The notes below the pieces were generated by a model. It was not told the origin of the DNA. It did no database searches and was given only the letters and a program-made list of their open reading frames with translations. This document shows positions 10,959-49,079 of a stretch of 64,000 nt of DNA, piece after piece. Both the position numbers and the translations under genes were made by a program. Each line of letters begins with the position of its first letter. Positions within the stretch are counted from its first letter, which is position 1. The DNA comes from Haliotis cracherodii (lineage: Eukaryota), in the NCBI RefSeq assembly GCF_022045235.1, contig NW_027266270.1:12400001-12464000 (forward strand). Direction: 5' to 3'.

Positions 10959-11296
10959 GTAAAATATCTGATCCCAATTAGACAGTCTTGTCTCACAGAC
11001 TTGCTCGCTCTGTGAAGAGAAAATACATGTCATGGTTACATGGTGATTATCCCTTTGAACTAAATATTAATTCAGACAAAGGATGTCATGAATCTCTGTC
11101 ACAAATAGTGATGCACTGTCTGCATATTATGCAAAAGAAGGATTTATTTTTTTCTTGTTTTGCCACATCCTTAACTTTAAAGTTCACGGGGAGCATTATA
11201 TCTAGTGTTTGAGGAACTATCTACACAATTATATATATTCTTATCAATTTTGTTTCAGCAGGAGTAGCTTTAATTCCAGTATCCAACTGATGCAGA

Positions 11297-13558
11297 ATGG
11301 GACGAGGCCAGCTGTATTCTCGGGGCATGAAGAAACAAAGCCTTTCGACAACAGCCTTGCTGAACGCGCTGTTGTTAGGCTTATTTCTGAACCTGTGTCC
11401 TCTGTCAGTTTTCTTTACTGATCCAAATAGCCCGGAATTGTGCTTCATCAACTGGAAGAATTTGTTCTACACTGGACTCTGCTTTCTGAAACTCGTCTTC
11501 GCTCTACTGAAAAACAGGGTGCGAACGTCCCTATTGAGATATGGCGGATGGAGGGTTTTCTGCTGTGGCACGTTCATTGTCTTATCTAGTTACCTATTTG
11601 TTGTCTTAGTTTTGGACAGAGCAGCGCTTTGGACATGGGAAACATTTGAATACAATTACATCAATAGATTAGAGGATAGCGTCGTTACCATAGATGAAAC
11701 CAGATCCCAGTTTATGGTGCGTGATCGTGAGATCCCCGGTCCAGAACCCCTGAAGCTCGAGAGACACATGAGATACGAAGGTGAAGACGTAAGACTGGTA
11801 TGTGAAGACATGCTGGTTTTCAATGGAATTGTGAAATTCCACGAGAAGCAGGTGATCTGGAAGCATAATAGGCAGAAAATCGAATCATCGCCCCAGCATC
11901 ATATCACAACAGTGTTTGAAGAAGTCACTTTGAATACTTCTAAAACATTATCCACTGAGTATGACTTCTATATCTATCATGTGAAGTCAAAGCTTGACAT
12001 TAATCTTATCAATGCTGAAGATTTTGGAAAATATTCCTGTCACGTTGCAAAACTGGCCACATTGCTTGCGTCATATGCTAGCGTCAATATGAAAAAAACA
12101 AACGCGGATGAACAAAGTCAGTCTAGAAGAAAAGAATCGTATGAATGTCCGAATGTCCGCAAAGAGCCAACCAAATGCCCATGTCCTGATGAGGATTTGC
12201 CGTCCATGAACTTTAATCCCTTGCCATACACCTGGACTGCAGAGTTCAGTTTAGCAAAGATCAAACCTACGAGAAGAACTGTTTCTGTTCCAGTAGGTGG
12301 TATTGTTTCAACAAGTGCTTCATATAGTTATTTGGAAGACGCGCCAAATCTAATTGACTTTGATCATGAAATCAACGGAAAGTCCTTCCAAAATACATGC
12401 GAGGGACTTGATCAGTCATGCTCCATATTTGTGTTCCTGTACTGGTTCCTGTGGCATGATGGTGGCCATTACTCAAACATTCCTGCCTTCTATCAACAAC
12501 TTCAGATGGTGGAGGGCGTTGGCGGAACAAGCTGGCAATGCGTTTGTCCTAACACATACGGAGTCCACAAATTCGTCTTCTATCGCCAGTTCTATGATAC
12601 AACTCGGGGAACGAACACAATTATTGAAGTGGATTACCCAGACACTGTCGAACTTGTTCCCGAGGAACCCCATCTCTTAGACTTGTACTACAATGGCTCA
12701 AAGAAAGCTCTTCCGTTGCCAGAGCCGTCTTGTTGGGGGAGTGTGAAAACAAAAGCCTGTGAACTACTTGAAATGTTTCTAAAGAATCTATCCTATAACT
12801 ACTTTTATAAAGAAAAGCAGATATTCCTCGGCGGATTCATGTTTTGTCTAGTATTGCCTTGGATTTTGACCAGAACGATATTGACATGGGTGACCAATCC
12901 AATCATCAACATGATACTAGGGAGGAGACGAGTCAACATCCAACCAATCCAAGGAAGTGGTACACTGGCAGGACTTGCGCCAGCAGACAACACTGTTTTT
13001 AAATACGACCTCTACATTTCCTATGCTGATGAACAGACGGCAATGGCGTCTGAAATTGCCCAGGCGCTCACCTCGTGGGGTTTAAGGGTGTGTTTTCGTG
13101 ATAATGATGTTCTCGGAAATGAAATTGTTAACCAGGCTGTTTCAAGGCTGATTGTGGAGAGCTGGAAATTCCTCGTCATTGTCTCACAAGAATACGTCGA
13201 CAGCCAACTTCAGAATAATTTTGAAATGCACCTTATCATACAGAGGCTCCGTGATGGCTATATTAACAATAGAAATGTTGCCATGTTAGCCCTCAATCCT
13301 GATTTGATTCCAGATGTCTTCAGCAGTTTTGTTATTTTAAGCCACTATGAAAACAGTTCTGATGATTTGGATGACATAATGTTATGGCATGGACAATCTA
13401 TATTTCCTAATGATTCAAACACCTCGGCCAAAATTACAGGATCATGCCACTGCCGAGGGATCTTCGATTGCCTTCCACGATTCTTGACATATTTTATTAG
13501 AACAAGTTATGTTTTCTGTTTCATATTTTGTCTTGTACTTTTAACATGGTCTGTTTGA
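11297..13558 (+). CDS. Ig-TIR membrane receptor-like protein, paralog A (753 aa, single coding exon)
   Basis: Long ORF. Ig motifs EGEDVRLVC / VIWKHN / SKLDI..INAEDFGKYSC. TIR box 1 YDLYISY, box 2 GLRVCFRDNDV, then SWKFLVIVSQEY. Hydrophobic stretches at the N-terminus, before the TIR and at the C-terminus. Splice acceptor TTTTGTTTCAG just upstream. Confidence 0.9.
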   Translation: MGRGQLYSRGMKKQSLSTTALLNALLLGLFLNLCPLSVFFTDPNSPELCFINWKNLFYTGLCFLKLVFALLKNRVRTSLLRYGGWRVFCCGTFIVLSSYLFVVLVLDRAALWTWETFEYNYINRLEDSVVTIDETRSQFMVRDREIPGPEPLKLERHMRYEGEDVRLVCEDMLVFNGIVKFHEKQVIWKHNRQKIESSPQHHITTVFEEVTLNTSKTLSTEYDFYIYHVKSKLDINLINAEDFGKYSCHVAKLATLLASYASVNMKKTNADEQSQSRRKESYECPNVRKEPTKCPCPDEDLPSMNFNPLPYTWTAEFSLAKIKPTRRTVSVPVGGIVSTSASYSYLEDAPNLIDFDHEINGKSFQNTCEGLDQSCSIFVFLYWFLWHDGGHYSNIPAFYQQLQMVEGVGGTSWQCVCPNTYGVHKFVFYRQFYDTTRGTNTIIEVDYPDTVELVPEEPHLLDLYYNGSKKALPLPEPSCWGSVKTKACELLEMFLKNLSYNYFYKEKQIFLGGFMFCLVLPWILTRTILTWVTNPIINMILGRRRVNIQPIQGSGTLAGLAPADNTVFKYDLYISYADEQTAMASEIAQALTSWGLRVCFRDNDVLGNEIVNQAVSRLIVESWKFLVIVSQEYVDSQLQNNFEMHLIIQRLRDGYINNRNVAMLALNPDLIPDVFSSFVILSHYENSSDDLDDIMLWHGQSIFPNDSNTSAKITGSCHCRGIFDCLPRFLTYFIRTSYVFCFIFCLVLLTWSV

Positions 13559-14796
13559 TTGAAGACCTCTGTGCTTGCCTTGTTGGCCTTATATGACCGC
13601 GTTTGCCTTATATGGAGCATTGCTGTTGTATCAATATAATGTATCATTGAAAGATATGAAGAAATGAGTGCACCTGGTGTTAAATAAGTTCAGTATTAGG
13701 AGGTTAGGATCTCTACAGGGACTGAGCATCTATTTTCAACAAGACATTTGGGTGCATGAGGGATGCGATTATTATGATGACCATACTTCTCTGTACATTG
13801 TATGCTCGTCAAAACAATTTAGGGATCACTGATATTTTGTAGCACTGTTCATTCGATTCCTTAAAATTTGGTGAATGGACTCCTGATCGACGGCTAACGT
13901 ACTGATATTGAGGACTACCCTTACTCAAGTGACTACATGACCAGAACAAAGAATTTGAATCATACTGAACTCGTAAACGTTCATTTTGACCAGCACTAAT
14001 TTTCATGGAAATTCTTGTTGTAATCTCCTCCTCACATCTACCGTAAAAATGGAGATCGTTCATTTGCTCACTTATTCTCATGAAGCATGAGCCAAAAGGA
14101 ATTTTGTGCGAAATTTGGGTTGATAAAGGCAGGTCGCTATGAAACTGCATCACTGTGTTCAACATGCCACAACGTCGACACCTCACGATTGAAGAACGAG
14201 CCAGAGCTATTGGGTGGCTAAATGAGAATGTTTCACAGCGGGAAGCTGCTCCAAGGTTAAATGTTAGTACATCCGTCATCTGCATATTACGTCAGCGATT
14301 CCAACAAACACAGACAGTACATGATAGACCAAGGTCAGGACGCCCTCGTGTGACAACATGAAGAGGAGACCGGTACGTCGTTGTTGAAGCATTGAGGAGG
14401 AGAACAGTCACAGCAAACCATCTTCGAAAGCAACTGAGGGCTGCTACAGGAACAAATGTCAGTGACCAAACCATAAGAAACCGTATGAGGGAAAGAAACA
14501 TCTGGCCCCGACGTCAAGCCGTTAGACCGCTTCTTCTTCCGCGTCACAGAGCAGCCAGAGACGCATGGGCACGGCAACACCGACAGTGGACAAGACAACA
14601 GTGGTCAGCAGTTCTTTTTTTCTGACGAATCTCGGTTCTCACTGAAGCATAATGACGGTCGTGTTCTTGTCTACAGACGGCGTGGGGAACGTTTTACTGA
14701 CGTCAACGTCCGTGAGCACAATCGTTTTGGTGGTGGTAGTGTCATGATGTGGGCCGCCTTCTAATTTCATCACAGAACCAATCTTTATGTCATCAA

Positions 14797-15070
14797 CGTC
14801 TAAGGCGCCGCGATTCGCTGTGCAGAGTTGCGTCTCTTGGGCACGCCAGAAACCAATGATTGTGGGTTCGAATCCCGGTTCGCCCCGATTATGTTTGAAT
14901 TCTAGGTTTGTCAGTACAATACCCGTGCTCGTGGGTTTCACCGAAGTGGTAAACGTCCGAGACCTGCATCACTTCGGGCTTTCCTCCCACATTAAGCTGA
15001 CACGCCGTGATATAACTGGAATACTGTTAAAAGCAGCGTTAAACCCAACTCACTCTCTCACTCACTCACT
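14797..15070 (+). mobile_element. SINE (family 2) inside the Tc1 transposase
   Basis: GTCTAAGGCGCCGCG..GGTTCGAATCCC B box..(ACTC)n tail. Confidence 0.85.
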
Positions 15071-15463
15071 CCTGATATGGCACCCATTGAACACGTATGG
15101 GATCTGTTAACGAGACGTGTTAGGGAGAACCACCCTCCACCTCAAGATCTGCGCCAGCTTGCTCAATGGCTGAATTTGGAGTGGCATGCTATCCCACAGA
15201 ACACACTACAGACATTAGTGACATCCATGAGGCGTCGTTGTGTTGCATGTGTGGCTGCTAGGGGCGGACACACTCGTTACTGACTTTTCTCTCATGGCCT
15301 GGATTTCCAACTTTGACCCCAGTGACATTATTGACATCAACACTTGTTCACGTTATGAAATGAAGTGGATTGTTCATGATTCTGTCTTACTGTATGCTCG
15401 GTCATTATTGAATTTACTACACATGTCTTCGTCTTCTGTTCCTTTTTTATTTTAAGTGCTAAC

Positions 15464-15745
15464 AGGGGGCACGGGTGGCCCAGTCGTCTAAGGCGCCGCG
15501 ATTCGCTGTGCAGAGTTGTGTCCCTTGGGTACGCCAGAAACATAATTGTGGGTTCGAATCCCGATTCGCCCCGATTATGTTTCTAGGTTTGTCAGCACCA
15601 TACCCGTGCTCGTGGGTTTCACTGAAGTGGTAAACGTCTGAGACCTGCATCACTTCGAGCTTTCCTCCTACATTAAGCTGACACGCCGTGATATAACTGG
15701 AATACTGTTAAAAGCGGCGTTAAATCCAACTCACTCACTCACTCA
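15464..15745 (+). mobile_element. Full-length SINE (family 2) with TSD
   Basis: GGGGGCACGGGTGGCCCAGTCG head; flanked by TTAAGTGCTAACA / TTAAGTGCAAACA. Confidence 0.88.
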
Positions 15746-16010
15746 ATTAAGTGCAAACATATCAATGTTCCCTAACTTCTTTTGAGTAGTATATATGGAC
15801 CCCGTGAGGATTCTGGGTTGGAATAGGTCTGAAGAGCCGGTTAAAGAGGATCGACCGGTCAATCCCAGCGATTGGATTTATACAAAATCTCGTATCAAGA
15901 CTATGTAATGGGTAGATAGCATGGATGGATCATGTGTATAGGATCACGTGTGTTATATGGTATATTGGAGAGAATTATATCACATTGTAGAAGATTATCT
16001 CACATCTTAA

Positions 16011-16830
16011 GGATCCACGAGTTCGTCTTCTACCGTCAGTTCTACAATACATCCCTTGGATTATACGAAGTTATTGTTGTGGAATATTCTACTTGTGTGG
16101 TGTAATCAATGCAGATACTTGAGTATCTTTTGTAAAGGACTGGTTTGGATTTTGACCAATCTCATTAAAATCAGATCTTAGTTCTCGCTACCGCTAAACA
16201 AAGATCTGAGAACACCCCATTACTGGTCATGTCAGACCGACGTTGCGCGACCGACCGATGGAATGACCGACAAGAAGTCGACATTAGCCAATAAGAAAGC
16301 AGCTTTCTCGTGCTTTACGGCACTAATTTCAAATTGGCGACTACGTTTCGAAACATATTTTGACAAATTCTCGATTAAAAGTTTGAAATCTGAACAAAAG
16401 AACATTCTGGATTTATGGCTTATAGATGGTCTAGATTGTATGCATGGATTCAGTCGTTAAGCTCGTAACTATCGCTGGGAATACCCCGTGTTAAGGTTTT
16501 CGAGGTTGCATGATCAGAAATCATATTCCAACTGTCACTTTTATGATCTGGTAAGCGACGCTCTGATTGGTCGGATGAAAGGTGAACCCAAATGGGATGT
16601 CCTCAGACCAAGAACGATGTTGAGACGGAAGACATATCCAAGCATCAGTATGATACTTGGGAGGAGAAATGTAAATATTCAGTCAATTCAAGGAAGGGGA
16701 ACAATAGAAAGACTTGCACCACCAGACATCAATGTTGATAAATGCGACCTCTATATTCCTATGCTGACGATCAGAGGACAAAAGAGCCCAAGCTCTCAAC
16801 TGGCAAGGTTTGGGAGTGGGGTTCTAAATG
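16011..16830 (+). pseudogene. Degraded fifth copy of the Ig-TIR gene (central, TM and early TIR fragments), split by an insertion
   Basis: 16011-16090 matches GVHKFVFYRQFYNT..VEY. 16137-16158 and 16611-16780 match GLAWILT|RT..NPIINMILGRRRVNIQPIQGRGT..LAP..KYDLYI. Deletions and frameshifts are present. Confidence 0.85.
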
Positions 16831-16984
16831 TAAATTTGTAATCGCAGACCTGTTGAATATTGAATGAAATGACCTAACCTGGCTATGTATATATTTTGTA
16901 CACATACACGCACATTCGCACTTGTAAGCGATTGAGTGAACATGCCTGTTTATTGCTTCGGGCATTGCTGATCACAGCTGACGC

Positions 16985-17805
16985 AACTGATCTATTTATA
17001 TACCTTAGGTTTTACCCTGTCGCTTTTGTATTTGAGCGGCATCGACCAGTGTTTGGTTAAACAGGTAACATGTTGTTAAACAGTCTCGATAAATTAATAA
17101 TACAAAACTTAGCCATGTATATGCCACACACCGTTATATAGGACCAAATCTGTAAATAATAGTTAAAATTATGTGCAACATCTCTGTCACATGTACCAAG
17201 CGCCTGGGGCCTGTTAGGTGCTTGAATTAAGATTGATTAATGTTATGCAGAATGCACGTAATTTGTGACTTCTGTTCCCATGAAAAGTGGTGTGGTGGGA
17301 CGTTGTGTTCAGAAACCTATTTGGCGCCATTTATCAACACATCAACTTCCAACTTTATAACCGATCTTACCCCGTGGTGATTCCGGGTTAGAACAGGCAA
17401 CCGGTAATTTATTTTCATCACAAGGACCGACTGGTGAGTCGGGTGGTCAGGCTCGATGAATTGGTTGATTGTGCGTCATGGTACCCCAACAGCGTCGATC
17501 GTTGTTAATACTATCAACAGCTAAATTACCTTGCTCGGGTTCGATGATTTATAGGCCGACTTTATATAAACGTAAAAGAGTTCTAGCTGAGTATGCACAA
17601 CTTAACAAAACTAGGTATTGATATCGTCTCCAAAACGCAACCAGGTGTTATAGACGCACTCTTACTGAAAACATTATGTATGTGAAGTTGTTTATCAACA
17701 ACAGCTCCGATTGCAAGCTTGTTGTGTCTCGATGGACCCGGAGTAAATACACTGAAAAACAGCTGACTACTGCTTTTAAGATACCAGTGAATAAGGTATG
17801 CTTGT
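16985..17805 (+). promoter_or_regulatory. Putative promoter and 5'-UTR exons of paralog B
   Basis: TATTTATA at about 16994. Donor-like sites CAG|GTAACA (about 17063) and AAG|GTATGC (about 17795) are conserved in the mirror arm (about 42055, about 40015). Acceptor TTTTGTCCCCAG at about 18196. Confidence 0.4.
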
Positions 17806-18218
17806 ACACATAATAATATATTAACGTTTCCTGATGGTATCGATTTTGATAGAAGTGATGTTGAATAGTAAGCCTATCTTAAACGCAGCTTAAGAACGGC
17901 CATTTCTGTTACCTATAGGCAGGGCATTTTTAGACACAGGTAATTTCAATAATTTATATTTAATATACACAATTGATGCACGGGTTGATGCATGTCATTG
18001 TATACCAATTACGTGGACCGATGCTCATGATGTCAAACATGTGACACAATATCAATCACTGGATTGTCTGGTCCAGACTCGATTATTTACAAACCGCAGT
18101 CATATCGTTAGAATATTGATGAACGCGGCGTTAAACAACAAACAAGCAAATCATAAACAGTGGTGATTTTAGTTTATTTATTGATTTTGTCCCCAGCTCA
18201 CCAGTCGGCGTGTACAAC

Positions 18219-20480
18219 ATGGACCAACGACGAAAGCTGTATTCTGGGGCTACAAGGAAACCACCCGTTTCTACACCAGCCTTGCTATGTGTCCTGTCTG
18301 TTGGCTTAGCGCTGAACCTTTGTCCTATCATCGACTTATTTACCGACCCAAACAGCCCTGACTTGTGTTTCATTAATTGGTATAAGCTGCTGTATATTGG
18401 ATACTGTTTCCTGAACCTCATTGTTGCTCTGTTGAGAAGCTCTGCCCGGAGGTCTGTGCTGAGATATGGCGGTTGGAGGGTGTTCCTGTGTGGCATGTTC
18501 ATCGTCGTGTCGAGTTATATCTTTGTTACGGTTGTTTTGGACAGATCAGCTCTATGGACGTGGAACACTTTTGAATCCAATTTCATCAAGAGACTGGAGA
18601 GCAACGTCGTTGGGATATTCGAAACTAGGCCTGACTTCGTTGTTCGTGAGTTCCGCACTCTAGAACCCATGAAACTCGAGCGACAAGCCAGGTATGAAGG
18701 TGAAGATGTAAGACTCGTGTGTGAGAACATCTTGATTTTCAATGGAAGAGTAACATTTCACGAGAAACAGGTCATCTGGAAGCATAATAAAGAAAGAATT
18801 GAATCGTCATCCCGACACCACATCACCACGTCGTTTGACGAAATACCTACAAATGAGACTATAAGAACATTGTCGAGTCTTCTTGATATGGACCTTCATT
18901 TATATCGTGTTGAATCAAAACTTGATATCTATCTAATTGAAGATGGTGATTTTGGAAAATTCTCCTGTCATGTTGCCAAAAAAGCTATAGCTATAGAATC
19001 GCAGCACAGTAAATCAGACACAGCTTCAAAACAGACCCGAACAACCACAAAGGAAAAAGTCCAAAATAAACCAAGAGAGAAACAACAATCACCCGAATGT
19101 CCTAAAACACGTGATGAACAGAACCGATGTCCCTGTCATTTTGAGGATTGGGCCCACATGAACTTAAATGTTTTACCCTATCAGTGGACGGCAGAGTTCA
19201 GTCTGGCGAAGATCAAACCTACGAGAAGAATTGTGTCTGTTCCAATAGGTGGTATTGTTTCAACAAATGCTTCATATAGTTATTTGAATGACGGGCCAAG
19301 CGTAATTGACTTTGATCATGAAATCAACGGAAATTCCTTCGTAAGTACATGCGAGGGACTTGATCAGTCATGCTCCATATTTGTGTACCTGTACTGGTTC
19401 CTGTGGCATGATGGAGGCCATTACTCAAACATTCCTGCCTTCTATCAACAACTTCAGATGGTGGAGGGCGTTGGCGGCACAAGCTGGCAATGTGTTTGTC
19501 CTAACACATACGGAGTCCACAAATTCGTCTTCTATCGCCAGTTCTACAATACGACTCTTGGAACATACCAAGTTATTGATGTGGAATACCCAGACACTGT
19601 CGAACTTGTTCCCGAGGAACCCCATCTCTTAGACTTGCATTACAATGGCTCAAAGAAAGCTCTTCCGTTGCCAGAGCCGTCTTGTTGGGGGAATGTGGAA
19701 ACAAAAGCCTGTGAGTTACTTGAAAGGCTTCTAAGGAGTCTATGTTGTAACTACTTTAACAAAGAAAAGCAGATATTCCTCTGCGGATTAATATTTTGTT
19801 TAGGATTGGCTTGGATCTTGACCGGAACGATATTGAGATGGGTGACCAATCCATGTATCAACATGATACTTGGAAGAAGACGAGTTAACATTCAGCCAAT
19901 CCAAGGAAGAGGTACACTAGCAGGACTTGCTCCAGCAGACAACACTGTCGTTAAATACGACCTCTACATTTCCTATGCTGATGAACAGACGGCAATGGCG
20001 TCTGAAATTGCCCAGGCGCTCACCTCGCGGGGTTTGAAGGTGTGTTTTCGTGATAATGATGTTCTCGGACATGAGATTGTTACCCAGGCTGTTTCAAGGC
20101 TGATTGTGGAGAGCTGGAAATTCCTCGTCATTGTCTCACAAGAATACGTCGACAGCCAACTTCAGAATAATTTTGAAATGCCGCTTATCATACAGAGATT
20201 CCACGAGGGTTATATCAACGACAGAAACGTATCCCTCTTACCATTGCGCCATGATTTGATTTCCAATGTCTTGAACAATTTCATTGTTCTGGACAAGTGT
20301 GAAAACAGTGAGGATCTAATAGAAGATGTACTGTTATGGTATGGGCCGTCGCTATTTCCAAACACTGCCCATATCATCAGACGTCGCCACTACGGTTTTA
20401 CATCGACCTCAGCCTACTATGTCAGTGGTGTTTGCTTTTATTTGTTGCTTTGTATACTTCTTACGGGCTCTGTTTGGTAG
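18219..20480 (+). CDS. Ig-TIR membrane receptor-like protein, paralog B (first ATG at 18219)
   Basis: Same architecture as A: EGEDVRLVC..WKHN..DFGKFSC; YDLYISY..GLKVCFRDNDVLG..SWKFLVIVSQEY; hydrophobic C-terminal tail. AATAAA at about 20983. Confidence 0.9.
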   Translation: MDQRRKLYSGATRKPPVSTPALLCVLSVGLALNLCPIIDLFTDPNSPDLCFINWYKLLYIGYCFLNLIVALLRSSARRSVLRYGGWRVFLCGMFIVVSSYIFVTVVLDRSALWTWNTFESNFIKRLESNVVGIFETRPDFVVREFRTLEPMKLERQARYEGEDVRLVCENILIFNGRVTFHEKQVIWKHNKERIESSSRHHITTSFDEIPTNETIRTLSSLLDMDLHLYRVESKLDIYLIEDGDFGKFSCHVAKKAIAIESQHSKSDTASKQTRTTTKEKVQNKPREKQQSPECPKTRDEQNRCPCHFEDWAHMNLNVLPYQWTAEFSLAKIKPTRRIVSVPIGGIVSTNASYSYLNDGPSVIDFDHEINGNSFVSTCEGLDQSCSIFVYLYWFLWHDGGHYSNIPAFYQQLQMVEGVGGTSWQCVCPNTYGVHKFVFYRQFYNTTLGTYQVIDVEYPDTVELVPEEPHLLDLHYNGSKKALPLPEPSCWGNVETKACELLERLLRSLCCNYFNKEKQIFLCGLIFCLGLAWILTGTILRWVTNPCINMILGRRRVNIQPIQGRGTLAGLAPADNTVVKYDLYISYADEQTAMASEIAQALTSRGLKVCFRDNDVLGHEIVTQAVSRLIVESWKFLVIVSQEYVDSQLQNNFEMPLIIQRFHEGYINDRNVSLLPLRHDLISNVLNNFIVLDKCENSEDLIEDVLLWYGPSLFPNTAHIIRRRHYGFTSTSAYYVSGVCFYLLLCILLTGSVW

Positions 20481-20529
20481 AATATCTTTTCTAATTGTGT
20501 CATCATATATGAATTGCTGCTTAGGTTTT

Positions 20530-20780
20530 GATTTTTGTTTGTTTGTTGTTTAACGCCGCACTCAGCAATATTCCAGCTATTCCAGCGGTCTGTAAATAAA
20601 CTGCACCAGACAATCCAGTGATTGGCATCATAAGCATACATCCACGCAATTGTGATACAATGGCATGCATCAACCAAGTCAGCGAGATCCTGTTAGTCGC
20701 CTCTTACGACAAGCATAGTTGCTTTTTGCGGCAAGCATGGGTTGCTGAAGACCTTTTCTACCCCGGACCTTTACGGGTAG
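20530..20780 (-). mobile_element. SINE (family 3) in the 3' region of B
   Basis: (TTTG)n tail followed by the family-3 body; flanked by the duplicated GCTTAGGTTTTGA. Confidence 0.82.
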
Positions 20781-38659: not shown

Positions 38660-38759
38660 GTTATACACACTGGCTGTTCAGCTGAGGATAGAATAATAAA
38701 CACCTTATAATCACCACTATTCAAAGAGTAATTGCCCCCTTATCAAAACAAATCTAAAA

Positions 38760-39790: not shown

Positions 39791-40633
39791 ATACATGGCT
39801 CAATATGGTGTGAAAATGTTAACTTAAAGTTCAATTTTGAAGCCGTTAAGTGAAAATACATGTGTCTAAAAATACACTGCCTAAGGTAACCGATAAAGAG
39901 TCTTTGTCAAGCTGTGTTGAAAATGGGAGATATATTTCATTCCGAGTCTGCCGATTCTATATCACGGCTGTCAAAATAGACGCCGCCAGGAAACATTATT
40001 ACTTGTACAAGCATACCTTATTCACTCGTATAGGAAAGCAGGATTCAGCAGTTTTTCAATATATATATACTCCGGGTACTTTGAAAGGCAACACGCATCT
40101 GGGCTGTTGTTGATAAACAACTTCGTATACGTAATGTATTCAGTGACAGTGGTTGTGCAATACCAGGTTGCGTTTTGGAGACGATATCAATACCTAGTTT
40201 TCCTTTGTTATGTATACTCGACAGAGAACGCTTAGTGCGATAACCATACATTGATTTTATATCTTTGTTGCCGTTATTGAGTTTGAAACAGCTTGCACTC
40301 AACAATATCCAGCTGAATGACGTAGTCTTGGAAATAATCGAGTCTGGACCAGCCATTCCAGCGACTGATATCTCGGTTCTGACGACCAGCACTGGGTAAG
40401 GCTGAAAAAAGTTGGAGAATGGCTGTGATGCATGTTGATCAATGCCGCGGAATATGTTTGTGAACACAAAGTTCCAGCACCCCTCTTCTGCAATTATCTT
40501 CTTTTCATGGGAATAGAAGAACTTCCGAGACTTCTCCTATTTATAAGCCCCAGGCCTAATTACGGAAAATAGCGCTTTCTCATTTAAAATATGTTATCCG
40601 GAATTAAGCCCAGGGCTCAATTTCGGAAGCTAA

Positions 40634-41767
40634 CGCCCCCTTCACATACACGGATTTTTCTTACGAGTCCTTACGGATCGCACACATTCACGGATTCTTA
40701 CGATTTGGCCACTTTTACGACCGATTTAAGAGTTGTTACGAGTTATTACGAGCTATTTACGGTTTATTACGGATTATTACGATGTATTTACGGCAAAATT
40801 ATACGATTTGCTACGAGCAACTTACGGGCATTTTACGAGGTTGTTACGGATTGTTACGAGTATATTACGGATTGTTACTATTCATCGAAGCATATACGTG
40901 TTAGTTAGGACCTGTTTACGTGTTGTTACGAATAGTTACGAGTTAGTTACGAATATTTACAAGTCCTTACGATTTTTTGCCAAAAAATATATATATCCTG
41001 CAAATCTCAATGTATCATCATTCGACAAGTGACACCAAGAGAGACAACATGGCATATGAGAGAAACCGATTGCAGTTATATATTTCGAAGCGCAGGAGAC
41101 TTCTTGTTGACTGCCTTCTTCTTTGGAGCCATGCTTGTAGATATTGTGGAGTAGATATGCAGAGATGTGACTTCTATGACTTCTGAATAACATCTGAAAA
41201 TGAAGTGTTCGCTTTTGCAGCTTTTATACCTTCCCCCAAATCGTAAACATTACTTTAGAAGACGTAAAGTATACGTATCTATTCGTAAAGTACTCGTTAC
41301 TGCACGGAAAGTGCTCGTAATAACTCGTAACAATCCGTAAAGCCATCGTAACACGACCCGAATGAAATCGTAAACAGCACGTAAGCACTCGTAATAAAAC
41401 GTAAATTATCCGTAAACAAATCGTAAACTAACCGTAACAAATCGTAAAAACATTGTTACGATCCATTTACGGATTCTTGCGAGCAGTTTACGGATGGTTA
41501 CGTGTTGTTGCGAGCGGTTTACGATACTTACAGATTGTTACGAGTTATTTACGAAAATATCAAGCCGTGGACAATCGTAAGATGACTTTTGACATGTAAA
41601 AAAAATTGCCTCTCCTTTTACGGATCCTTAAGAGTGTCTGCGAGATGTTGCGAGTTGTGACGAGTTATTTACCGATACCAGCGAGTTATTTACGGATGCT
41701 TGCGATTGACTACGAGTTGGCGATCCGTAAGGACTCGTAAGAAAAATCCGTGTATGTGAAGGGGACA
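40634..41767. mobile_element. PIF/Harbinger-like MITE
   Basis: About 45-bp TIRs CCCCTTCACATACACGGATTTTTCTTACGAGTCCTTACGGATCG, TAA on both flanks, and dense internal TTACG(A/G) motifs. Confidence 0.85.
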
Positions 41768-42353
41768 TAAATAGGGGGGAAACCCTTTGCTGAAAAGCAA
41801 TTAGAAACTGTTAAGTTGTTTTTAACAGAGAAAGTATAACACGTGAATTTGAACTTTGAACCGGACTTACTGTTGAATGCACATAAGGATTTGCCTCGCG
41901 TGGTGCATCGCCACGTATTAACTTTCAAAAGGAGTAAGTTATAAATTTAAGGAAGATCACTCTAATATAAGTATCCGAATTAAGTCCATGGGCCTTTCTA
42001 AGTCCATGAGCGCAATTACGTAGTGTACGTGCATTCTGCAACACCGAACATATTACCTGTTAAACCCAACTCCGGTTGATGTAGCCAAAATACGTTACTG
42101 TACATAAACGAAGCCGGGTAAAGCCCAAGATGTATAAATAGATAGTTGCGTCAACCGAGAAAGCGAGGTCCTCAGGATCAGCGACGCCCCGAATCAATAG
42201 GCATCTGCACTCGTTTGTGCCTGTACGTTTGCGTGCCCAACACAAAATTTAAATATGCGTAGCTAGGTTTCGCAGGCCTGCAGGTAGAATTTGATGTGCG
42301 TGTTGCATGTTATAATGGCCTGTTGGAACCGACCATTGGCGAGCGACTTGCAA

Positions 42354-42965
42354 TAAGTTATAGTTACAACACACCAAGACGAGTTGTTTGGGCAGTAAGA
42401 GCACGGTTTGGCTTGGCATTTGATTGACAGACAAAAGGACCGAGGAGCGGAGCCCCGAGGTGATTCTTTTGTCTGTCAATCAAATGCCAATCCAAACCGT
42501 TCTCTTACTGCCCAAACAACGAGTAGGTGGGGTGTTGTAAGTGACTTGTAGCACGGGTTGCGACGGTCATTCCATTTAACGTTTAACTTTTAATCTTATT
42601 GTTAAATCAAGTGTAAACTTTTGAATTTTCAAAGGCACATTAGAAATGTCAACTATTAATTTTCCGAATTTAGCAAAATGCGTTCTGTGTCCAGTTGTTT
42701 TTATGTTTGACAGTTACATTGTAATCTTTTAATTAAGTTATAAACATTTCTATTGTTTTTTGTTGTTTATTTACGTTATTACTCTTGAACACTGTGTACA
42801 ACACTAAAGAAACATTGTAAGTTTGAAATTTCTCAAGCTAGTAGGCGGGGCTTGCTGATCTTGGCATCAGCCAAGTGTAATAATCTTTAACAAACCGTGC
42901 TCTTACTACCATGATACAGCACGGGTAAGATCAAAGGTACCGCTCGCAACCCGTGCTACAATGTA
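42354..42965. mobile_element. Hairpin-ended non-autonomous element (copy 2, uninterrupted)
   Basis: Hairpin 42355-42548 with arms of about 85 bp and central CCGAGGAGCGGAGCCCCGAGG; same IR-bounded body as copy 1. Confidence 0.8.
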
Positions 42966-43311
42966 TTTCACTGTGTACCACGGATACTTCCGAGGTACTA
43001 GTAGGTTTTCATTCTGTTAAAATGTATAAAAATGTGTTTATATGTTGCTAAGGAACAGGGGGCCTAGCCAATTAGCTTGAAGCAAATTATAAAGTCGACT
43101 ACACCAATATCCTTTCCACTATGGGCCATCCTACTCACGGATATAGATGAAACTATGCCATAAACCGTGATATACCGTGGAACAAACATATGTCCTACTC
43201 TTATAAAGGATCGATTTAGCGACTAGGATCCTGAATACAATCGCTGGCCGCGCACCTTATCAGTGAAAGGAGTGTTAGGGGCATCGCTTGAGAAAGAGTT
43301 CCTGCTCTTTC

Positions 43312-43436
43312 GTGAGTGAGTATGGTTTTACGCCGCTTTTAGCAATATTCCAGCAACATCACGACCCGGGACACCAGAAATGGACTTCACACATTGTACC
43401 CATGTGGGGAATGGATCCCGGGTCTTCGGCGTGACA
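43312..43436 (-). mobile_element. Truncated family-1 SINE
   Basis: GTGAGTGAGTATGGTTTTACGCCGC...GGTCTTCGGCGTGAC. Confidence 0.8.
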
Positions 43437-44733
43437 ACTGCAAGAGGCACTTTCCTAGGGATGCATTATGACCCCTCGTGACTTTCATTGCTTTGCTGAT
43501 ATTGTAACGTCAGCAAACGTTTTGGGGACCAACCATTTGATATTAGGGGGTATGGGTTTTTATTGAGAAAAAACCCATTGTCCCCAAAAAGTCTTGAAAA
43601 ACATAATTATGCTTCAGACTGCTTGACGTGCCTTCCATTACTTGTGTCAATATGGTGTTAGCAAAAGCGTCTATGCTTGTCTTAAGAGGCGACTAACGCG
43701 ATCGGGTGGTCAAGGCTCGCCAACTTGGTTGATGCATGTCATCGTATCTCAATTGCTTTGAGTGATGCTCATGATGTCACTGGATCGTCTGGTCCAGACT
43801 CGATTATTTACAGACCGTCGTCATATAGCTGGAACACTGCTAAGTATGGCGTCAAACAAAATACCATGTGGTAGTGATAGGTATAAGTCTGGTTAGATGT
43901 TGACCCCTGAACGTGTCATTAACAGGTCATGTGACTTTTCTCAGCCAATCAGAACAGACTGGATGGCTTTCAAATCGCAAGCATTACATAGGTAATGGCA
44001 TATCCAACACAAGTGATTACTAAATGTCTTTGTTTAGACCCAATACAAAGTGAAATATATCTTAAAACAATTTAGGGGAAGACCGTTTCCAAAACCATCT
44101 TGTGCATCAGGTCATTGTTTATCTGGATGAAATGCCCAGCTTACTTTCTATAAATATAAACTAGGTCATGTCTGACAAGTGCTTCTAGTGCGGACATGCA
44201 GTGAGTGATAAACATAGATATCAACAGTGAACATGACACCCCTAAAGTTCAATCGATAAAGTACAACACTAAGTGACTTTCTATGATACTGTAATCTTAT
44301 TTACTTTACTGTCAAAATCATGGGGGGATATTTGCAGATAGATCGTGATATAAGGAAACTAGGTAACGCTTATGATTGACAAGGTTCGGATTACGCTTAC
44401 TGCTTATAGAGCTTCAATAACAGTATTAACTAAAACACTATAGTATTGAAGCTCACGAGAACCCTTAAATGTGAGGATGGGGAAATACAAGAAACATTTT
44501 TTTAAATCTTTATTTTGCACAACACAAAGACCATGCATCATTATTTGTGATTGAGCCATTCATGACAAATGACCTGAATACTTAAGGCGTCTTTAACATG
44601 GCGAACCGGTCAAGCAATCAACATGAACATATAATAATAACAATGGCGTGTTGAGAATTTTGCTCAACCGTTCCACGGCCAACATCTACATACACACAGA
44701 GGATTTGCTGCAAAACCGAGTTTAGAATCAATA

Positions 44734-45063
44734 TACCGTATAGACGTAATAAGCGCGTTGCTCTAAGAAGCGCCCACGGCGATATTTGCTCATTTTTTGG
44801 CTAGTGAACAATCTCAATTAGCACCCCTTCCAACTGTACACAAGACTTATTTATTCGTGTATAATACGCACTCGTATGTTATATACACCCTTAATTATGG
44901 GCAATTAAATCCTGGAAAAATATTTCTGTCGTATATAAACATTTCAGGTTGTCAGCATAAGCCACGAAATTTACGATCTTTCGACTCAAAATAATATTCT
45001 AATAAGAGCCCCCTATTTCTAATTTTGAGAGCGCCCTGGGCGCTTATTACGTCGAATACGGTA
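44734..45063. mobile_element. pogo/Tigger-type MITE
   Basis: TACCGTATAGACGTAATAAGCGC...GCGCTTATTACGTCGAATACGGTA. Confidence 0.75.
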
Positions 45064-46065
45064 ATTCTGTATACAGATGCCTTTCATTTTTTTAATGTGT
45101 CTTTTCACCCCCTCTCTACACACCGCCATGCTGAGCTACAAAATGGACACCATTAAACGTGTACAAATAACTCAGAAATACTGGTATTTCCTACTATTGT
45201 ACTTATCTTTTACAACTAAATCATTCCTGGACGTTAAGCAAAATAATCTAGTCAATTACAACACATGGTGCGGGTGTGTGCACACACACCCTTTTATTAT
45301 TTCGAAAAAAATCTTTATTTCTGTATAAATTACCACCAAGGACAATATATAGATCTTAATTGTGCACCCCCCTCCTTTTCAAAAAGCTGTATCCGCCCAT
45401 GGTACCTATACTATTACATATATATTCTGAATGTATAAATCCAAGTCACTAGGACTGACCAACCGATCCTGTTTAAGTGGCCCTTTAGACATATTCCATC
45501 CCAGAATCCTCACAGGGTCCATACACAATGTAGAAGAAAATTATGGTCATCATAATAATTGCATCCCTCTTTTACCCAATGGGCTTTTGTTCAGAACATG
45601 CTCAGCCCATGCACATATCCTAACCTCATAATCCTAAACTAATTAGCATAAGGTGCACCTATTTCTTTAAATATTTCATTTTCATCAAAGGCTTGTTTCA
45701 AAGCTTGCCACACCAAGCCCACTTTCCTGTGCTAAAAATGATTGGACTATCGCACATATAGATAGTCCAATTAGAGAACGTTTCACAAAATCAACATCCA
45801 CGACTGGTACACCTTCGTATGAAAGTGGTTTACCGCTGGGATATGTCTTTTTCATCTTCAATTGGATATCGCGTTTTCATTACAAGGGGCACAACTCGTA
45901 GTCTACGCGAGGTGGCGCCAGGGTTGAGCCAAGAAAAGTGGCCTTGTTGTGGCAAGGGTAGAAACTAGGCTTTGATATAGGCTAGTGGACACGCTTGCCT
46001 TGAGAAGATGTCCATACCACATCAATGGTCCATATATGCCTTCAATCAAACAAACCATTTTACAA

Positions 46066-48342
46066 CTATAAAATATGAAATATAACTGCAATCAACACTA
46101 TTGTATTAAAATATATCAAGAATATGATAAAGCCATCGAAGATCCCTTGGCAGTGGCGTAGTTCTGTAATTTGGGCCGAGGTGTATGATTCATTAGGAAA
46201 TAAAGATTGTCTGTGCCATAACAGTATATCATCCAAAACATCAGAACTGTTTTCATAGTGGCTTAAAATAACGAAACCGCTGAAGACATCTGGAATCAAA
46301 TCAGGATTGATGGCTAACATAGCAACATTTTTATTGTTAATATAACCATCACGCAGCCTCTGTATGATAAGGTGTATTTCAAAATTATTCTGAAGTCCAC
46401 TGTCGACGTATTCTTGTGAGACAATGACGAGAAATTTCCAGCTCTCCCCAATCAGCCTTGAAACAGCCTGGTTAACAATTTCATTTCCGAGAACATCATT
46501 ATCACGAAAACACACTCTCAAACCCCGCGAAGTGAGCGCTTGGGCGATTTCAGTCGCCATTGCCATCTGTTCATCTGCATACGAAATGTAGAGGTCGTAT
46601 TTCACAACAGTGTTGTCTGCTGGCGCAAGTCCTGCTAGTGTACCTCTGCCTCGGATTGGCTGAATGTTGACTCGTCTCCTCCGAAGTATCATGTTGATGA
46701 TTGGATTGGTCACCCTCGTCAAGAGCGTTTTACTTAAACAATAAGAAACAGCTACACACACAATTATTCCACCGTAGAAAATTTGTTTCTCTTTGAGGAA
46801 AAAGTCACAAGCCATCGACTGTAAAATGATTTCAAGATACTTGCAGACTGTTGTTTCTATTCCCCCCCAACAAGAGAGCTCTGGCAAAGGAAGAAGTTTC
46901 TTTGAGCCATTGTAATACAAATCCAAGACAAGGGGCTCCTGAGGAACAAGTTCTACAGTGTCGGGATATTCCACATCAATAATTTCGTGTGTTCCAAGGG
47001 CCGTATTGTAGAACTGGCGATAGAAGACGAATTTGTGGACTCCATATGTGTAAGGACAAACACATTGCCAGCTTGTGCCGCCAACGCCCTCCACCATCTG
47101 AAGTTGTTTATAGAAGGCAGGAATGTTTGAGTAATGGCCACCATCATGCCACAGGAACCAGTACAGGAACACAAATATGGAGCATGACTGATCAAGTCCC
47201 TCGCATGTCTTTAGGAAGGACCTTCCGTTTATTTCATGATCAAAATCAACTACACTTGGCACGTCATTCAAGTAACTATATGACGCGCTTGTTGACACTA
47301 TACCACCAACTGGAACAGACACAATTCTTCTCGTTGGTTTGATCTTTTCTAAAATGAACTCTGCAGACCATGTGTATGGTAAGGGTTTGAAGTTCTTAGG
47401 AGGCAAATCCTCAACAGGAACTGGGCATCTGGTTTGTTCTTTGCGGACATTCGGGCATTCAGACGACTTTCTTCTTTCTGAATAATCTTCATTATTTTTA
47501 CTTTTGGCGGAACCTTGTTTACCTGTGTGTGTTTCCCTCTTTTCGTGTCTCATAGGTGTGTTGTAATTTTTGGGGTTGCTCGCAAGTGACGCAATTATTG
47601 TGGCCATTTTTGCAACGTGACAGGAATATTTTCCAAAATCTTCAGCATTGATAAGATTAATTTCAAGGTTTGACTTTACACGATAAAAATAAGTATCAGT
47701 AATATTCAAAGGGACTTCTTCAAACACTGTTGTGATATGGTGCCAGGACGATGATTCAATTATCTGTCCATTATGCTTCCAGATCACCTGCTTCTTGTGA
47801 AATTTTACAATTCCCTGGTAAATCAGCACGTCTTCACAAACCATTCTTACATCTTCACCCTCGTATCGCATGAGTCTCTCAAGCTTCAGGGGTTCTGGAC
47901 CGGGGATCTCACGGTCACGCACCATAAACTGGGATCTGGTTTCATCTATCATAACAATGCTATCCTCTAATCTATTGATGTAATTAGACTTAAATATTTC
48001 CCATGTCCAAAGAGCTGACCTGTCCAAAACTACGGCAACAAATAGGTAACTAGATAAGACAATGAACAAACCACAACAGAAAACTCTCCATACGCCATAT
48101 CTCAACAGGGACGTTCGCACTCTGTTATTCAGAAGAGCGAAGGCGAGTTTCAGAAAGCATAGTCCAGTGTAGAACAAATTCTTCAAGTTTATTAAACACA
48201 AGTCCTGGCTATTTGGATCGGTAAAGAAAACTACCAGAGGAAACAGGTTCCAAAATAAGCCAATCAACAGCACATGCAGCAAGGCTGTTGTCGAAATGTT
48301 TGGTTTCTTCATGCCCCTTGAAGACAGCTTGCCTCGTCCCAT
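46066..48342 (-). CDS. Ig-TIR membrane receptor-like protein, paralog A' (758 aa)
   Basis: Intact long ORF; N- and C-termini closest to A; same Ig, TM and TIR motifs; the same acceptor TTTTGTTTCAG lies upstream. Confidence 0.9.
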   Translation of the reverse strand: MGRGKLSSRGMKKPNISTTALLHVLLIGLFWNLFPLVVFFTDPNSQDLCLINLKNLFYTGLCFLKLAFALLNNRVRTSLLRYGVWRVFCCGLFIVLSSYLFVAVVLDRSALWTWEIFKSNYINRLEDSIVMIDETRSQFMVRDREIPGPEPLKLERLMRYEGEDVRMVCEDVLIYQGIVKFHKKQVIWKHNGQIIESSSWHHITTVFEEVPLNITDTYFYRVKSNLEINLINAEDFGKYSCHVAKMATIIASLASNPKNYNTPMRHEKRETHTGKQGSAKSKNNEDYSERRKSSECPNVRKEQTRCPVPVEDLPPKNFKPLPYTWSAEFILEKIKPTRRIVSVPVGGIVSTSASYSYLNDVPSVVDFDHEINGRSFLKTCEGLDQSCSIFVFLYWFLWHDGGHYSNIPAFYKQLQMVEGVGGTSWQCVCPYTYGVHKFVFYRQFYNTALGTHEIIDVEYPDTVELVPQEPLVLDLYYNGSKKLLPLPELSCWGGIETTVCKYLEIILQSMACDFFLKEKQIFYGGIIVCVAVSYCLSKTLLTRVTNPIINMILRRRRVNIQPIRGRGTLAGLAPADNTVVKYDLYISYADEQMAMATEIAQALTSRGLRVCFRDNDVLGNEIVNQAVSRLIGESWKFLVIVSQEYVDSGLQNNFEIHLIIQRLRDGYINNKNVAMLAINPDLIPDVFSGFVILSHYENSSDVLDDILLWHRQSLFPNESYTSAQITELRHCQGIFDGFIIFLIYFNTIVLIAVIFHIL

Positions 48343-49079
48343 TCTGCATCAGTGGGATATTAAAGGCTACTGCTGCTGAAACAAAATTGATGAGAGTATA
48401 CAATTATGTGGATATTTCCTGAAACACTGGTACTTGAGATGAACAGAACCATTAAATGTAACATTTTAAGAACTATATTTGGAATACTATTCATACAATG
48501 CACCATTATTTGTGACAACGCGATTCATGCATTGATATTTAGTCACAATGTAACCATGGCATCATTGGTCCAATAATGCTTGAAGAAAATGATATTGCGC
48601 CAGACTGTTGAAAACATATACAATTGTCTGCAACTCATCTTGAAAAAATAATTGAACTGCTATATCACTGGCGTCAGTCGTGAGCTTAGGTGAAACGGTC
48701 AATAAATTCAATCTCCTGTTTTAACACAGATGTATTCTTTATTCATTCTTTCAGAACGTTTTATTCCCTGGTCCATAAAACAAGGGTCCCAGTGGATGCC
48801 TCTAGATTCTACCCTCAGTCACAGTAGCCAATGGTGAGCTTTTCCCCATTCTCTGTTTAATGTGGATGCTAAATGAATACTAGTCAGTGTATACAATACT
48901 TTTGAATTGTATATATATACGATCATTTTCAGTGTCATAGTATACTATAGCAGGAACATTAATACTGTGTATCAATACATCAAATATAGGTACAAGAATT
49001 AAAGTTCAAGGGTTGATTGATACGTTCTGAGCCTCACATCAAGGGAATTGTGTCACCATGAAGGCTTCTATTGTGGACT

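What the first reader, a model, noticed from the sequence alone, without database searches (positions are those of the whole stretch)
11030..48560. The cluster is a ~37-kb imperfect palindrome: the A>B> pair is duplicated in inverted orientation as <B'<A'
Seen: homology extends through non-coding DNA in reverse complement. Matches are 11030-11130 with 48490-48560, 13660-13800+15795-15880 with 45430-45660, 16830-17070 with 42040-42290, 17270-17810 with 40000-40520, 20970-21020 with 35450-35505, and the SINE at 21288 with 34955. The spacer of about 12 kb (22.5-34.8 kb) is non-coding, TE-rich DNA. Inference: A and B were duplicated and kept as a unit, which is compatible with a functional pair (receptor plus co-receptor as in IL-1R/IL-1RAcP, or sensor plus helper).
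Basis: partly seen in the sequence, partly recalled or inferred. Interest (0 to 1): 0.78.

Follow-up and report, generated by a model that had tools for sequence, protein, structure and literature searches.

The report
Inverted duplication of TIR-receptor gene pair
Two neighbouring abalone-type immune-receptor-like genes were copied long ago as one block in mirror orientation, giving an ordinary but well-preserved old inverted duplication whose copies still swap sequence; nothing shows that the two genes work as a pair.

Summary
The window, from a gastropod genome whose nearest protein hits are Haliotis, carries four single-coding-exon paralogues ordered A> B> ... <B' <A'.

- **Arms and spacer:** the left arm is about 11087-21410 and the right arm about 34811-48529. 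The spacer between them is about 13.4 kb.
- **Non-coding homology:** with genes and repeats left out, 8 colinear minus-strand matches link the arms. There were 0 plus-strand hits and 0 hits in 50 shuffles. Five of these matches have no third copy in the 1.18-Gb genome.
- **One event:** a 2-kb transposon splits a left-arm block that is continuous in the right arm. Non-coding divergence (K2P 0.17-0.34) equals the A/A' and B/B' dS of about 0.25-0.35, while A/B dS exceeds 1 at the gene ends. This fits a single en-bloc inverted duplication of an older tandem pair.
- **Later gene conversion:** the central Cys-rich/TM/TIR part was converted within arms. Codons 41-200 were converted between B and B'.

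The "functional pair" reading has no support:
- B' carries a TAG at codon 113.
- The A and B TIR domains are nearly identical.
- Two Haliotis relatives show only A-type proteins.
- A distant paralogue in this genome sits alone.

This is an ordinary kind of locus.

The parts
11087..21410 (+). Left arm of the inverted duplication (A, gene relic, B and flanks), 10.3 kb
   Evidence: Colinear minus-strand matches to 48529-34811
11297..13558 (+). Gene A, 753 aa, single coding exon. Hydrophobic segments near residues 21-39, 87-105, 511-532 and 733-751; weak Ig-like domain at 161-250; TIR at 569-667
13791..15797 (.). 2.0-kb multi-copy element inserted in the left arm only (87-94% identical to many genomic copies). 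It splits a block that is continuous in the right arm
   Evidence: The junction at 13791-13801 is bridged by contigs in 4 of 4 runs laid
15999..16823 (+). Decayed fragment of a third family gene (codons ~418-460 and ~518-613), interrupted by a multi-copy element at 16156-16607. No coding counterpart in the right arm
17576..17948 (+). Unique non-coding block upstream of B. It matches 40233-39851 upstream of B' (K2P 0.235)
18219..20480 (+). Gene B, 753 aa from the ATG (the listed ORF starts at GTG 18210), same architecture as A
20534..20779 (.). SINE just downstream of B. It has a positional counterpart at 35923-36190 downstream of B', so it was probably present before the duplication
20973..21079 (+). 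Unique non-coding block downstream of B, matching 35505-35383
21280..21410 (+). Degraded SINE at the inner edge of the left arm. Its best match in the window is 34956-34811
21411..34810 (.). Spacer, 13.4 kb. Contains the 22-bp satellite 21389-22529, nested multi-copy elements 23151-28776 and a transposase remnant 31734-32465(-). No family gene remnant
34811..48529 (-). Right arm of the inverted duplication (B', A' and flanks), 13.7 kb
36407..38659 (-). Gene B'. The frame of 750 codons is kept throughout but has one TAG at codon 113 (38321-38323; TGG in A, B and A'). The longest ORF is 620 aa and lacks the N-terminal hydrophobic segments
44430..44567 (-). Off-diagonal copy of the A-type 5' flank (73% to 11084-11213) inside the right-arm intergenic region. 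Possibly the upstream relic of the lost third gene
45391..45678 (-). Right-arm block that holds the empty site of the left-arm 2-kb insertion
46066..48342 (-). Gene A', 758 aa, intact ORF

Best explanation
The locus is an old inverted segmental duplication, a diverged palindrome with a spacer.

1. **Before the event (inferred):** an ancestral tandem array A > (third gene, now a relic) > B of a gastropod-restricted family of membrane proteins already existed. The proteins carry one Ig-like domain, a Cys-rich module and a cytoplasmic TIR domain.
2. **The event (shown):** one event copied about 10 kb holding this array, with its flanks, in reverse orientation.
3. **Afterwards (shown):** the arms drifted apart to about 0.23-0.27 substitutions per neutral site. 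They took up different transposon insertions, and the spacer was filled by transposons and a satellite.
4. **Gene conversion (shown from synonymous sites):** non-allelic conversion kept overwriting parts of the coding regions. Neighbours converted each other in the central Cys-rich/TM/TIR module. The two arms converted each other over codons 41-200 of B and B'.
5. **Selection (shown):** three genes are intact and under moderate purifying selection (dN/dS 0.3-0.4). B' recently acquired a nonsense codon.
6. **Why the genes travel together (inferred):** they are neighbours. This is birth-and-death evolution of an immune-type multigene family, not proof of a heteromeric A+B receptor.
For: Architecture:
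- Searches give the four copies and the colinear anti-diagonal.
- 9 minus-strand hits (8 colinear), 0 plus-strand hits, 0 hits in 50 shuffles.
- Uniqueness of the anchors in the 1.18-Gb genome.
- Empty site of the 2-kb element in the right arm.

Single event and timing:
- Non-coding K2P is 0.17-0.34 over 11 blocks.
- At the unconverted parts of the genes, dS(A,A') is 0.22-0.41 and dS(B,B') is 0.29-0.53. dS(A,B) is 1.1-2.5 at the gene ends.

Order of events:
- The tree of the gene ends puts (B,B') at 99/99.
- (A,A') at 85/88 is sister to the H. rubra + H. asinina proteins, with 80/89 support.

Gene conversion:
- Informative sites at codons 1-360 and 641-778 favour (A,A')(B,B').
- At codons 361-640 the counts are 21 for grouping by arm, 5 for (A,A')(B,B') and 4 for the third grouping.
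- B-B' dS is 0.071 (7 of 104 synonymous sites) in codons 41-200. It is 0.29-0.32 beside that tract, and 0.305 for A-A' in the same codons.
- In the middle-part tree the four genes of the window cluster apart from the relatives, with 75/71 support.

Gene identity:
- TIR in 10 of 10 and Ig_3 in 9 of 10 family members.
- The family profile matches TIR chains in the PDB at E of about 1e-6.
- The nearest Atlas clusters are IL-1RAcP and IL-18R, scoring 0.90-0.91.

Artefact excluded: the arms differ by 12-28%, far more than haplotypes would.
Against: - The whole-genome search did not recover the 16972-17074 anchor.
- The two SINE pairs cannot be proven to be shared insertions from sequence alone.
- The gene relic at 15999-16823 has no coding counterpart in the right arm. 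The ancestral unit is therefore partly inferred.
- Support for A/A' being younger than the split from H. rubra and H. asinina is moderate (85/88 and 80/89).
- The direction of conversion is unclear. In codons 461-560 A' is the outlier, even against the outgroups.
- No expression data were obtained and no orthologous locus was seen, so selection on the arrangement cannot be excluded.
Confidence: 0.85

Rival explanations
1. One reading: A and B form a functional heteromeric pair (receptor plus co-receptor, or sensor plus helper), and selection kept them linked, so the pair was duplicated and retained as a unit.
For: - Both arms keep the same order and orientation after about 0.25 substitutions per site.
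- A, A' and B are intact with dN/dS 0.3-0.4.
- A and B differ strongly at the N-terminal hydrophobic/Ig part and at the C-terminal tail (dS above 1, 53-60% amino-acid identity). This would allow different roles.
- The architecture resembles IL-1R-type receptors, whose members act as heterodimers. That they do so is established knowledge, not tested here. The Atlas score is 0.90-0.91.
Against: - B' has a premature TAG that removes the N-terminal hydrophobic segments.
- The A and B TIR domains are nearly identical and exchange sequence.
- No B-type protein was found outside this genome among the 7 hits, while A-type proteins exist in two Haliotis species.
- The C10 paralogue stands alone.
- Linkage after a block duplication needs no selection.
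- No co-expression data were obtained.
Confidence: 0.1
2. Two or more independent events. For example, an inner inverted duplication made B/B', and a separate later or earlier one made A/A', giving the mirror order by coincidence or by stepwise growth of the palindrome.
For: The blocks next to B/B' show somewhat lower divergence (K2P 0.17-0.22) than those next to A/A' (0.24-0.27).
Against: - The standard errors are 0.03-0.06, so the difference is not significant.
- Intergenic blocks between A and B (16972-17948) are also colinear with the right arm at K2P 0.23-0.25. The whole interval therefore shares one history.
- dS of A/A' and of B/B' overlap.
Confidence: 0.04
3. Assembly artefact: a falsely duplicated or mis-oriented haplotype contig.
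For: No contig in the four runs laid spans A to B.
Against: - The arms differ by 12-28% and by kilobase-scale transposon insertions. That is far beyond allelic divergence.
- The arms carry different coding sequences, each with its own open frame.
- The left-arm junction between the A 3' flank and the transposon is present in 4 of 4 independent runs.
Confidence: 0.01

Closest known systems
Inverted segmental duplications and palindromes with arm-to-arm gene conversion. Examples are the two large inverted segmental duplications of the human IGK locus (PMC11327106, abstract seen in the listing) and the palindromes of ape sex chromosomes (PMC11168930, listing only). That Y-palindrome arms exceed 99% identity is recalled, not taken from a call.
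   Same: - Two arms in mirror orientation around a spacer.
- Multigene-family members inside the arms.
- Evidence of non-allelic gene conversion between the arms (B/B' codons 41-200).
   Different: - The arms here are small (10-14 kb) and old (12-28% diverged).
- Conversion is patchy and confined to coding parts. Non-coding DNA has drifted at the neutral rate.
- One gene is already disabled.
Tandem-duplication-driven expansion of TIR-domain receptor genes in molluscs (mussel TLRs: PMC10279657, passages read)
   Same: Lineage-specific local duplication of TIR-bearing membrane receptor genes, with copy number differing between related species.
   Different: - The genes here have no LRR ectodomain, so they are not TLRs.
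- The duplication is inverted and moved a two-gene block.
- The terms 'gene conversion' and 'inverted' occur 0 times in that paper.
IL-1 receptor family (IL-1R1, IL-1RAcP, IL-18R): Ig ectodomain, transmembrane segment, TIR
   Same: - An Ig-like domain outside and a TIR inside, separated by a hydrophobic segment.
- The nearest Atlas clusters by features (0.90-0.91).
- IL-1RAcP TIR is among the best PDB profile hits.
   Different: - Only one weak Ig-like domain (below Pfam's cut-off).
- Two or three extra N-terminal hydrophobic segments.
- A conserved Cys/Trp-rich module with no family match.
- A C-terminal hydrophobic tail after the TIR.
- No sequence similarity outside the TIR.
[quoted passage not shown]
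   Same: The TIR sits between hydrophobic segments, in an abalone genome. This is probably the same family.
   Different: The paper gives a count only (one instance). It has no locus structure, and the term 'tandem' occurs 0 times. Identity with this family was not tested, because no sequence was available.

Membership tests
Inverted segmental duplication / palindrome | Two copies in reverse-complement orientation with colinear homology that extends beyond coding sequence | tested here: met
   Eight colinear non-coding minus-strand anchors, 0 plus-strand hits and 0 hits in 50 shuffles. Five anchors are unique in the genome
Inverted segmental duplication / palindrome | Both copies derive from one event (equal divergence along the arms) | tested here: met
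   K2P is 0.17-0.34 over 11 blocks with overlapping errors. dS of A/A' and of B/B' overlap
Inverted segmental duplication / palindrome | Not an assembly artefact | tested here: inconclusive
   Divergence of 12-28% plus arm-specific transposons argue strongly for a real duplication. No read or contig spanning an arm-spacer junction was examined (one search covered 12900-18899 only)
Homogenised palindrome of the sex-chromosome type | Arms kept near-identical along their length by ongoing arm-to-arm conversion | tested here: not met
   Non-coding identity is 73-85%. Only one ~480-nt coding tract (B/B' codons 41-200) shows reduced dS, at 0.071
Receptor/co-receptor (or sensor/helper) gene pair | The pair is conserved as neighbours in related genomes | not testable with these tools
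Only A-type proteins from H. rubra and H. asinina were found
Receptor/co-receptor (or sensor/helper) gene pair | Co-expression of the two partners | not testable with these tools
   No RNA run holds the locus. The four runs laid cover intergenic DNA and genes at similar depth, as genomic DNA would
Receptor/co-receptor (or sensor/helper) gene pair | Division of labour visible in the signalling domains of the two partners | tested here: not met
   In TIR codons 561-680, A-B dN is 0.039 and dS 0.22, with sequence exchange between A and B
IL-1 receptor family | Cytoplasmic TIR domain | tested here: met
   PF01582 and PF13676 score above their cut-offs in all four genes and in 10 of 10 family members
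IL-1 receptor family | Ectodomain made of (usually three) Ig domains, with a single-pass topology | tested here: not met
   One Ig_3 match below the curated cut-off (17 bits against 30). It is seen in 9 of 10 members, best E 4.7e-05. There are four to five hydrophobic segments.
Toll-like receptors | Leucine-rich-repeat ectodomain | tested here: not met
   No LRR family matched at E up to 0.1 in any of the four genes or the 10 family members

The most novel reading that the evidence does not exclude
The mirror arrangement is functional, not just a relic. Conversion between neighbours and between arms keeps one shared signalling core (Cys-rich module, membrane segment, TIR) uniform across four receptor genes. 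The N-terminal membrane/Ig part and the C-terminal tail are left free to diversify into A and B types, which assemble as heteromers. The locus would then be a small concerted-evolution cassette for a gastropod-specific TIR receptor system.
Probability: 0.1. Interest if true: 0.55.

Novelty: new member of a known kind. Interest (0 to 1): 0.3.

Why it matters
The locus is a clean, datable example of how a lineage-restricted immune-type gene family grows in a mollusc. The sequence of events is a block inverted duplication, then transposon insertions, then patchy gene conversion that homogenises the signalling module while the ends diverge, and then loss of one copy.

The gene family itself is the more interesting object. 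It is uncharacterised, its TIR lies between membrane segments, and it was found only in Haliotis, Gigantopelta and two unnamed ENA assemblies. The palindrome adds little that is new in kind.

For annotation, three points matter:
- B' should be flagged as carrying a nonsense codon.
- The 600-aa model for it (P0003) starts downstream of that stop.
- The central parts of the four genes cannot be used for orthology.

Tried and rejected
- **Synteny in relatives:** The look-up of encoding contigs for the H. rubra and H. asinina proteins was closed, so the orthologous loci were never seen.
- **Expression:** The look-up of sequencing runs (kind rna) listed 22 runs, none on record as RNA. The four runs laid (X19, X1, X5, X10) cover the intergenic region and transposons at about the same depth as the genes. 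They look like low-coverage genomic DNA about 97% identical to the window. They say nothing on expression, and no contig spans A to B.
- **Structure:** In its place I used a family profile against PDB sequences, Pfam on all family members and the Atlas.
- **Extension of the palindrome:** I looked outside 11087/48529 and inside the spacer. There are no colinear unique anchors.
- **Right-arm counterpart of the gene relic:** I looked for coding remains matching 15999-16823. There are none. Only an off-diagonal copy of the A-type 5' flank turned up.
- **Searches not spent:** the big representative-protein search was not used. Its 50% clusters cannot separate A-type from B-type, which are 65-70% identical. 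The third word search was not used either.
- **Literature:** no paper in the library holds 'abalone', 'TIR domain' and 'inverted duplication' together. The top-ranked paper held two of the three terms. Supplementary files were not requested. Table 2 of PMC11103948 and any supplements listing its ORFs might identify this family in H. laevigata.
- **Rejected readings:**
  - Parallel tandem duplications in each arm. The gene ends group A with A' and B with B'.
  - Purifying selection alone as the cause of the similar middle part. Synonymous divergence drops from above 1 to 0.1-0.3 there.
Full report
**What is in the window.** The 64-kb window has about 40% G+C and no N. It lies at C7:12400001-12464000 of a 1.18-Gb, 80-contig assembly. 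It holds four long ORFs of one family:

| Gene | Coordinates | Strand | Length |
|---|---|---|---|
| A | 11297-13558 | + | 753 aa |
| B | 18219-20480 | + | 753 aa from the ATG |
| B' | 36407-38659 | - | 750 codons, one stop |
| A' | 46066-48342 | - | 758 aa |

The best proteins from other organisms are uncharacterised proteins of Haliotis rubra and H. asinina, 61% identical to B. More distant ones come from Gigantopelta aegis and from two unnamed ENA assemblies. The genome is therefore a gastropod, probably an abalone or a close relative. That last point is an inference.

**Checking the observation.**
- Self-BLAST shows A/A' matching in reverse complement over 11087-13573 with 48529-46031 (82%). 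B/B' match over 18156-20503 with 38721-36383 (87%). The cross pairs are weaker, at 75-76%.
- Over aligned codons, A/A' is 85.2% identical, B/B' 88.3% and A/B 77.2%.
They are listed one by one in the observation check.
- The anchors run in strict mirror order from 11087 with 48529 inward to 21410 with 34811.
- For the control I took the 2447 nt of left-arm DNA that is neither coding nor a known repeat. I searched it against the right arm's non-coding DNA. This gave 9 minus-strand hits, 8 of them colinear. There were no plus-strand hits and no hits in 50 shuffles.
- Whole-genome searches show that five anchors occur only twice in 1.18 Gb, once in each arm. These are 11204-11296, 13648-13792, 15798-15884, 17589-17948 and 20973-21079.
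- The anchor at 16972-17074 was too weak to be recovered genome-wide.
- Nothing colinear lies outside the arms or within the spacer.

**A transposon insertion that proves arm homology.** Positions 13791-15797 are a 2.0-kb element with many copies, 87-94% identical, across the genome. It sits exactly between two left-arm blocks, 13648-13801 and 15794-15930. Their right-arm counterparts abut at 45525/45523. The right arm therefore preserves the empty site. A second element at 16156-16607 and several SINE/MITE-like repeats account for most of the rest of the left intergenic region. About 940 of the roughly 1630 non-repeat intergenic bases still align to the right arm (my count).

**One event, and its age relative to the A/B split.**
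- Eleven non-coding blocks give K2P of 0.17-0.34, each with a standard error of 0.03-0.09.
- Synonymous divergence at the unconverted parts of the genes is the same size. For A-A' it is 0.22-0.41. For B-B' it is 0.29-0.53.
- A-B synonymous divergence is saturated at the gene ends, at 1.1-2.5.
- Informative sites: 234 favour (A,A')(B,B'), 32 favour grouping by arm and 7 favour the third grouping.
- A protein tree of the gene ends was rooted with the Gigantopelta/ENA proteins. It puts (B,B') at 99/99. It puts (A,A') at 85/88 as sister to the H. rubra + H. asinina proteins, with 80/89 support.
- The tandem A/B pair is therefore older than the split from those abalones. The inverted duplication is younger, with moderate support.

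**Gene conversion.**
- In codons 361-640 (Cys-rich module, membrane segment, TIR) the (A,A')(B,B') signal vanishes. The counts are 5 sites for it, 21 for grouping by arm and 4 for the third grouping.
- A-B dS falls to 0.11-0.22 there.
- In the tree of this part, the four genes of the window cluster together apart from the relatives, with 75/71 support.
- Since synonymous sites are affected, this is sequence exchange and not selection.
- Separately, B and B' differ at only 7 of 104 synonymous sites in codons 41-200 (dS 0.071). The value is 0.29-0.32 on either side of the tract. It is 0.305 for A-A' in the same codons. That is an arm-to-arm conversion tract.
- The direction of the exchanges is unclear. 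In codons 461-560 A' is the outlier, even against the outgroups.

**State of the genes.**
- A, B and A' are intact.
- B' keeps the frame over all 750 codons but has TAG at codon 113 (38321-38323), where the other three genes have TGG.
- The stop lies inside the recently converted tract, so it is probably young. This is an inference.
- The remaining ORF, modelled as the 600-aa protein P0003, lacks the N-terminal hydrophobic segments.
- Whole-gene dN/dS is 0.30-0.40 for all pairs.

**What the genes encode.**
- Pfam finds only a TIR domain, above its cut-off in all four genes.
- It also finds one weak Ig-like domain, seen in 9 of 10 family members with best E of 4.7e-05.
- A family profile hits only TIR chains in the PDB, at E of about 1e-6. 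The hits include IL-1RAcP, MyD88, a TIR-STING fusion and bacterial TIR NADases.
- The Atlas places the protein next to IL-1RAcP and IL-18R clusters at 0.90-0.91, which is a lead only.
- Hydrophobic segments lie near residues 21-39, (54-75), 87-106, 511-532 and 733-751. The TIR therefore sits between two of them.
- No structure could be predicted.

**The spacer.** The spacer 21411-34810 holds a 22-bp satellite at 21389-22529. It also holds a young 2-kb element at 25964-28002, 87-97% identical to its other copies, most of them 93% or more. That element is nested in another element spanning 23151-28776. A DDE_3/HTH_32 transposase remnant lies at 31734-32465. There is no remnant of the gene family. 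The spacer is therefore at least half repeat-derived. The stretch 28.8-31.7 kb was not assessed.

**The pairing hypothesis.** I found nothing that requires it.

Against it:
- The nonsense codon in B'.
- The near-identity and the exchange of the A and B signalling modules.
- Only A-type proteins in H. rubra and H. asinina among the 7 hits. This is weak evidence, because annotation may be incomplete.
- A solitary family member on contig C10.

For it:
- The arrangement and three intact genes have persisted.
- A and B differ strongly at both ends.

The decisive tests could not be run. Those are synteny in relatives, co-expression and physical interaction. No RNA run held the locus. The four runs laid behave as genomic DNA of organisms about 97% identical to the window. 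All four bridge the junction between the A 3' flank and the transposon. None spans A to B.

**Verdict.** Duplication of A and B as a unit is supported, and the functional pair is unsupported. The locus is an old inverted segmental duplication of a tandem gene pair, with later transposon insertions, patchy gene conversion and one disabled copy. It is a new example of a well-known kind of structure. The uncharacterised gene family inside it is the more interesting lead.

Noticed in passing
window 15999-16823 and 44430-44567: The left arm holds a decayed fragment of a third family gene between A and B. It covers codons ~418-613 and is 72-83% identical to all four genes. The right arm has no coding remnant there. 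At the corresponding place it has a third copy of the A-type 5' flank (73% to 11084-11213). The duplicated unit may have been A-third gene-B.
   Followed up: partly
window 11297-13558 and its paralogues; proteins P0005-P0011: The gene family is uncharacterised. It was found only in Haliotis, Gigantopelta and two unnamed ENA assemblies. It has an unusual layout: 2-3 N-terminal hydrophobic segments, one Ig-like domain, a nearly invariant Cys/Trp-rich module with no family match, a membrane segment, a TIR, and a C-terminal hydrophobic tail.
   Followed up: partly
window 11245-11296, 48343-48395, 18175-18218, 38660-38700: Splice-acceptor-like motifs (a polypyrimidine run followed by AG) lie 25-50 nt upstream of the ATG of all four genes. 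They are conserved within A/A' and within B/B'. The genes may have an upstream non-coding exon.
   Followed up: no
window 21389-22529; G000:C1:75478052-75479568: A 22-bp satellite of 52 copies starts inside the degraded SINE at the inner edge of the left arm, and its unit resembles the SINE's own sequence. A 71-75% similar array lies on contig C1. A 212-aa ORF across the array is a repeat artefact.
   Followed up: no
window 46800-47100 (A' codons ~461-560): In this segment A' is the outlier of the four genes. Its dS to A is 0.84, and it is only 51% identical to the H. rubra and H. asinina proteins, against 61-66% for A, B and B'. It may have been converted from an unknown donor, or it may have evolved fast.
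   Followed up: partly
window 6056-9139: A 41-bp satellite of about 75 copies (82% matches) lies just left of the palindrome.
   Followed up: no
window 55824-56747: An intact 307-aa ORF with six or seven C2H2 zinc fingers lies to the right of the palindrome.
   Followed up: no
G000:C12:36225337-36225801: A 534-aa open frame on another contig shares only the Cys/Trp-rich module (26-28% identity over about 145 residues) with the family. The module may occur without the TIR.
   Followed up: no
window 35113-35225: A MITE-like hairpin (37-nt arms, 97% complementary, 39 nt apart) lies in a stretch present only in the right arm, between the unique anchor and the inner SINE.
   Followed up: no
window 10791-10960 (tRNA-like part 10881-10952): A tRNA-derived SINE family has at least six copies in the window. 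One copy lies just outside the left arm and one at the inner edge of the right arm (34787-34956).
   Followed up: partly
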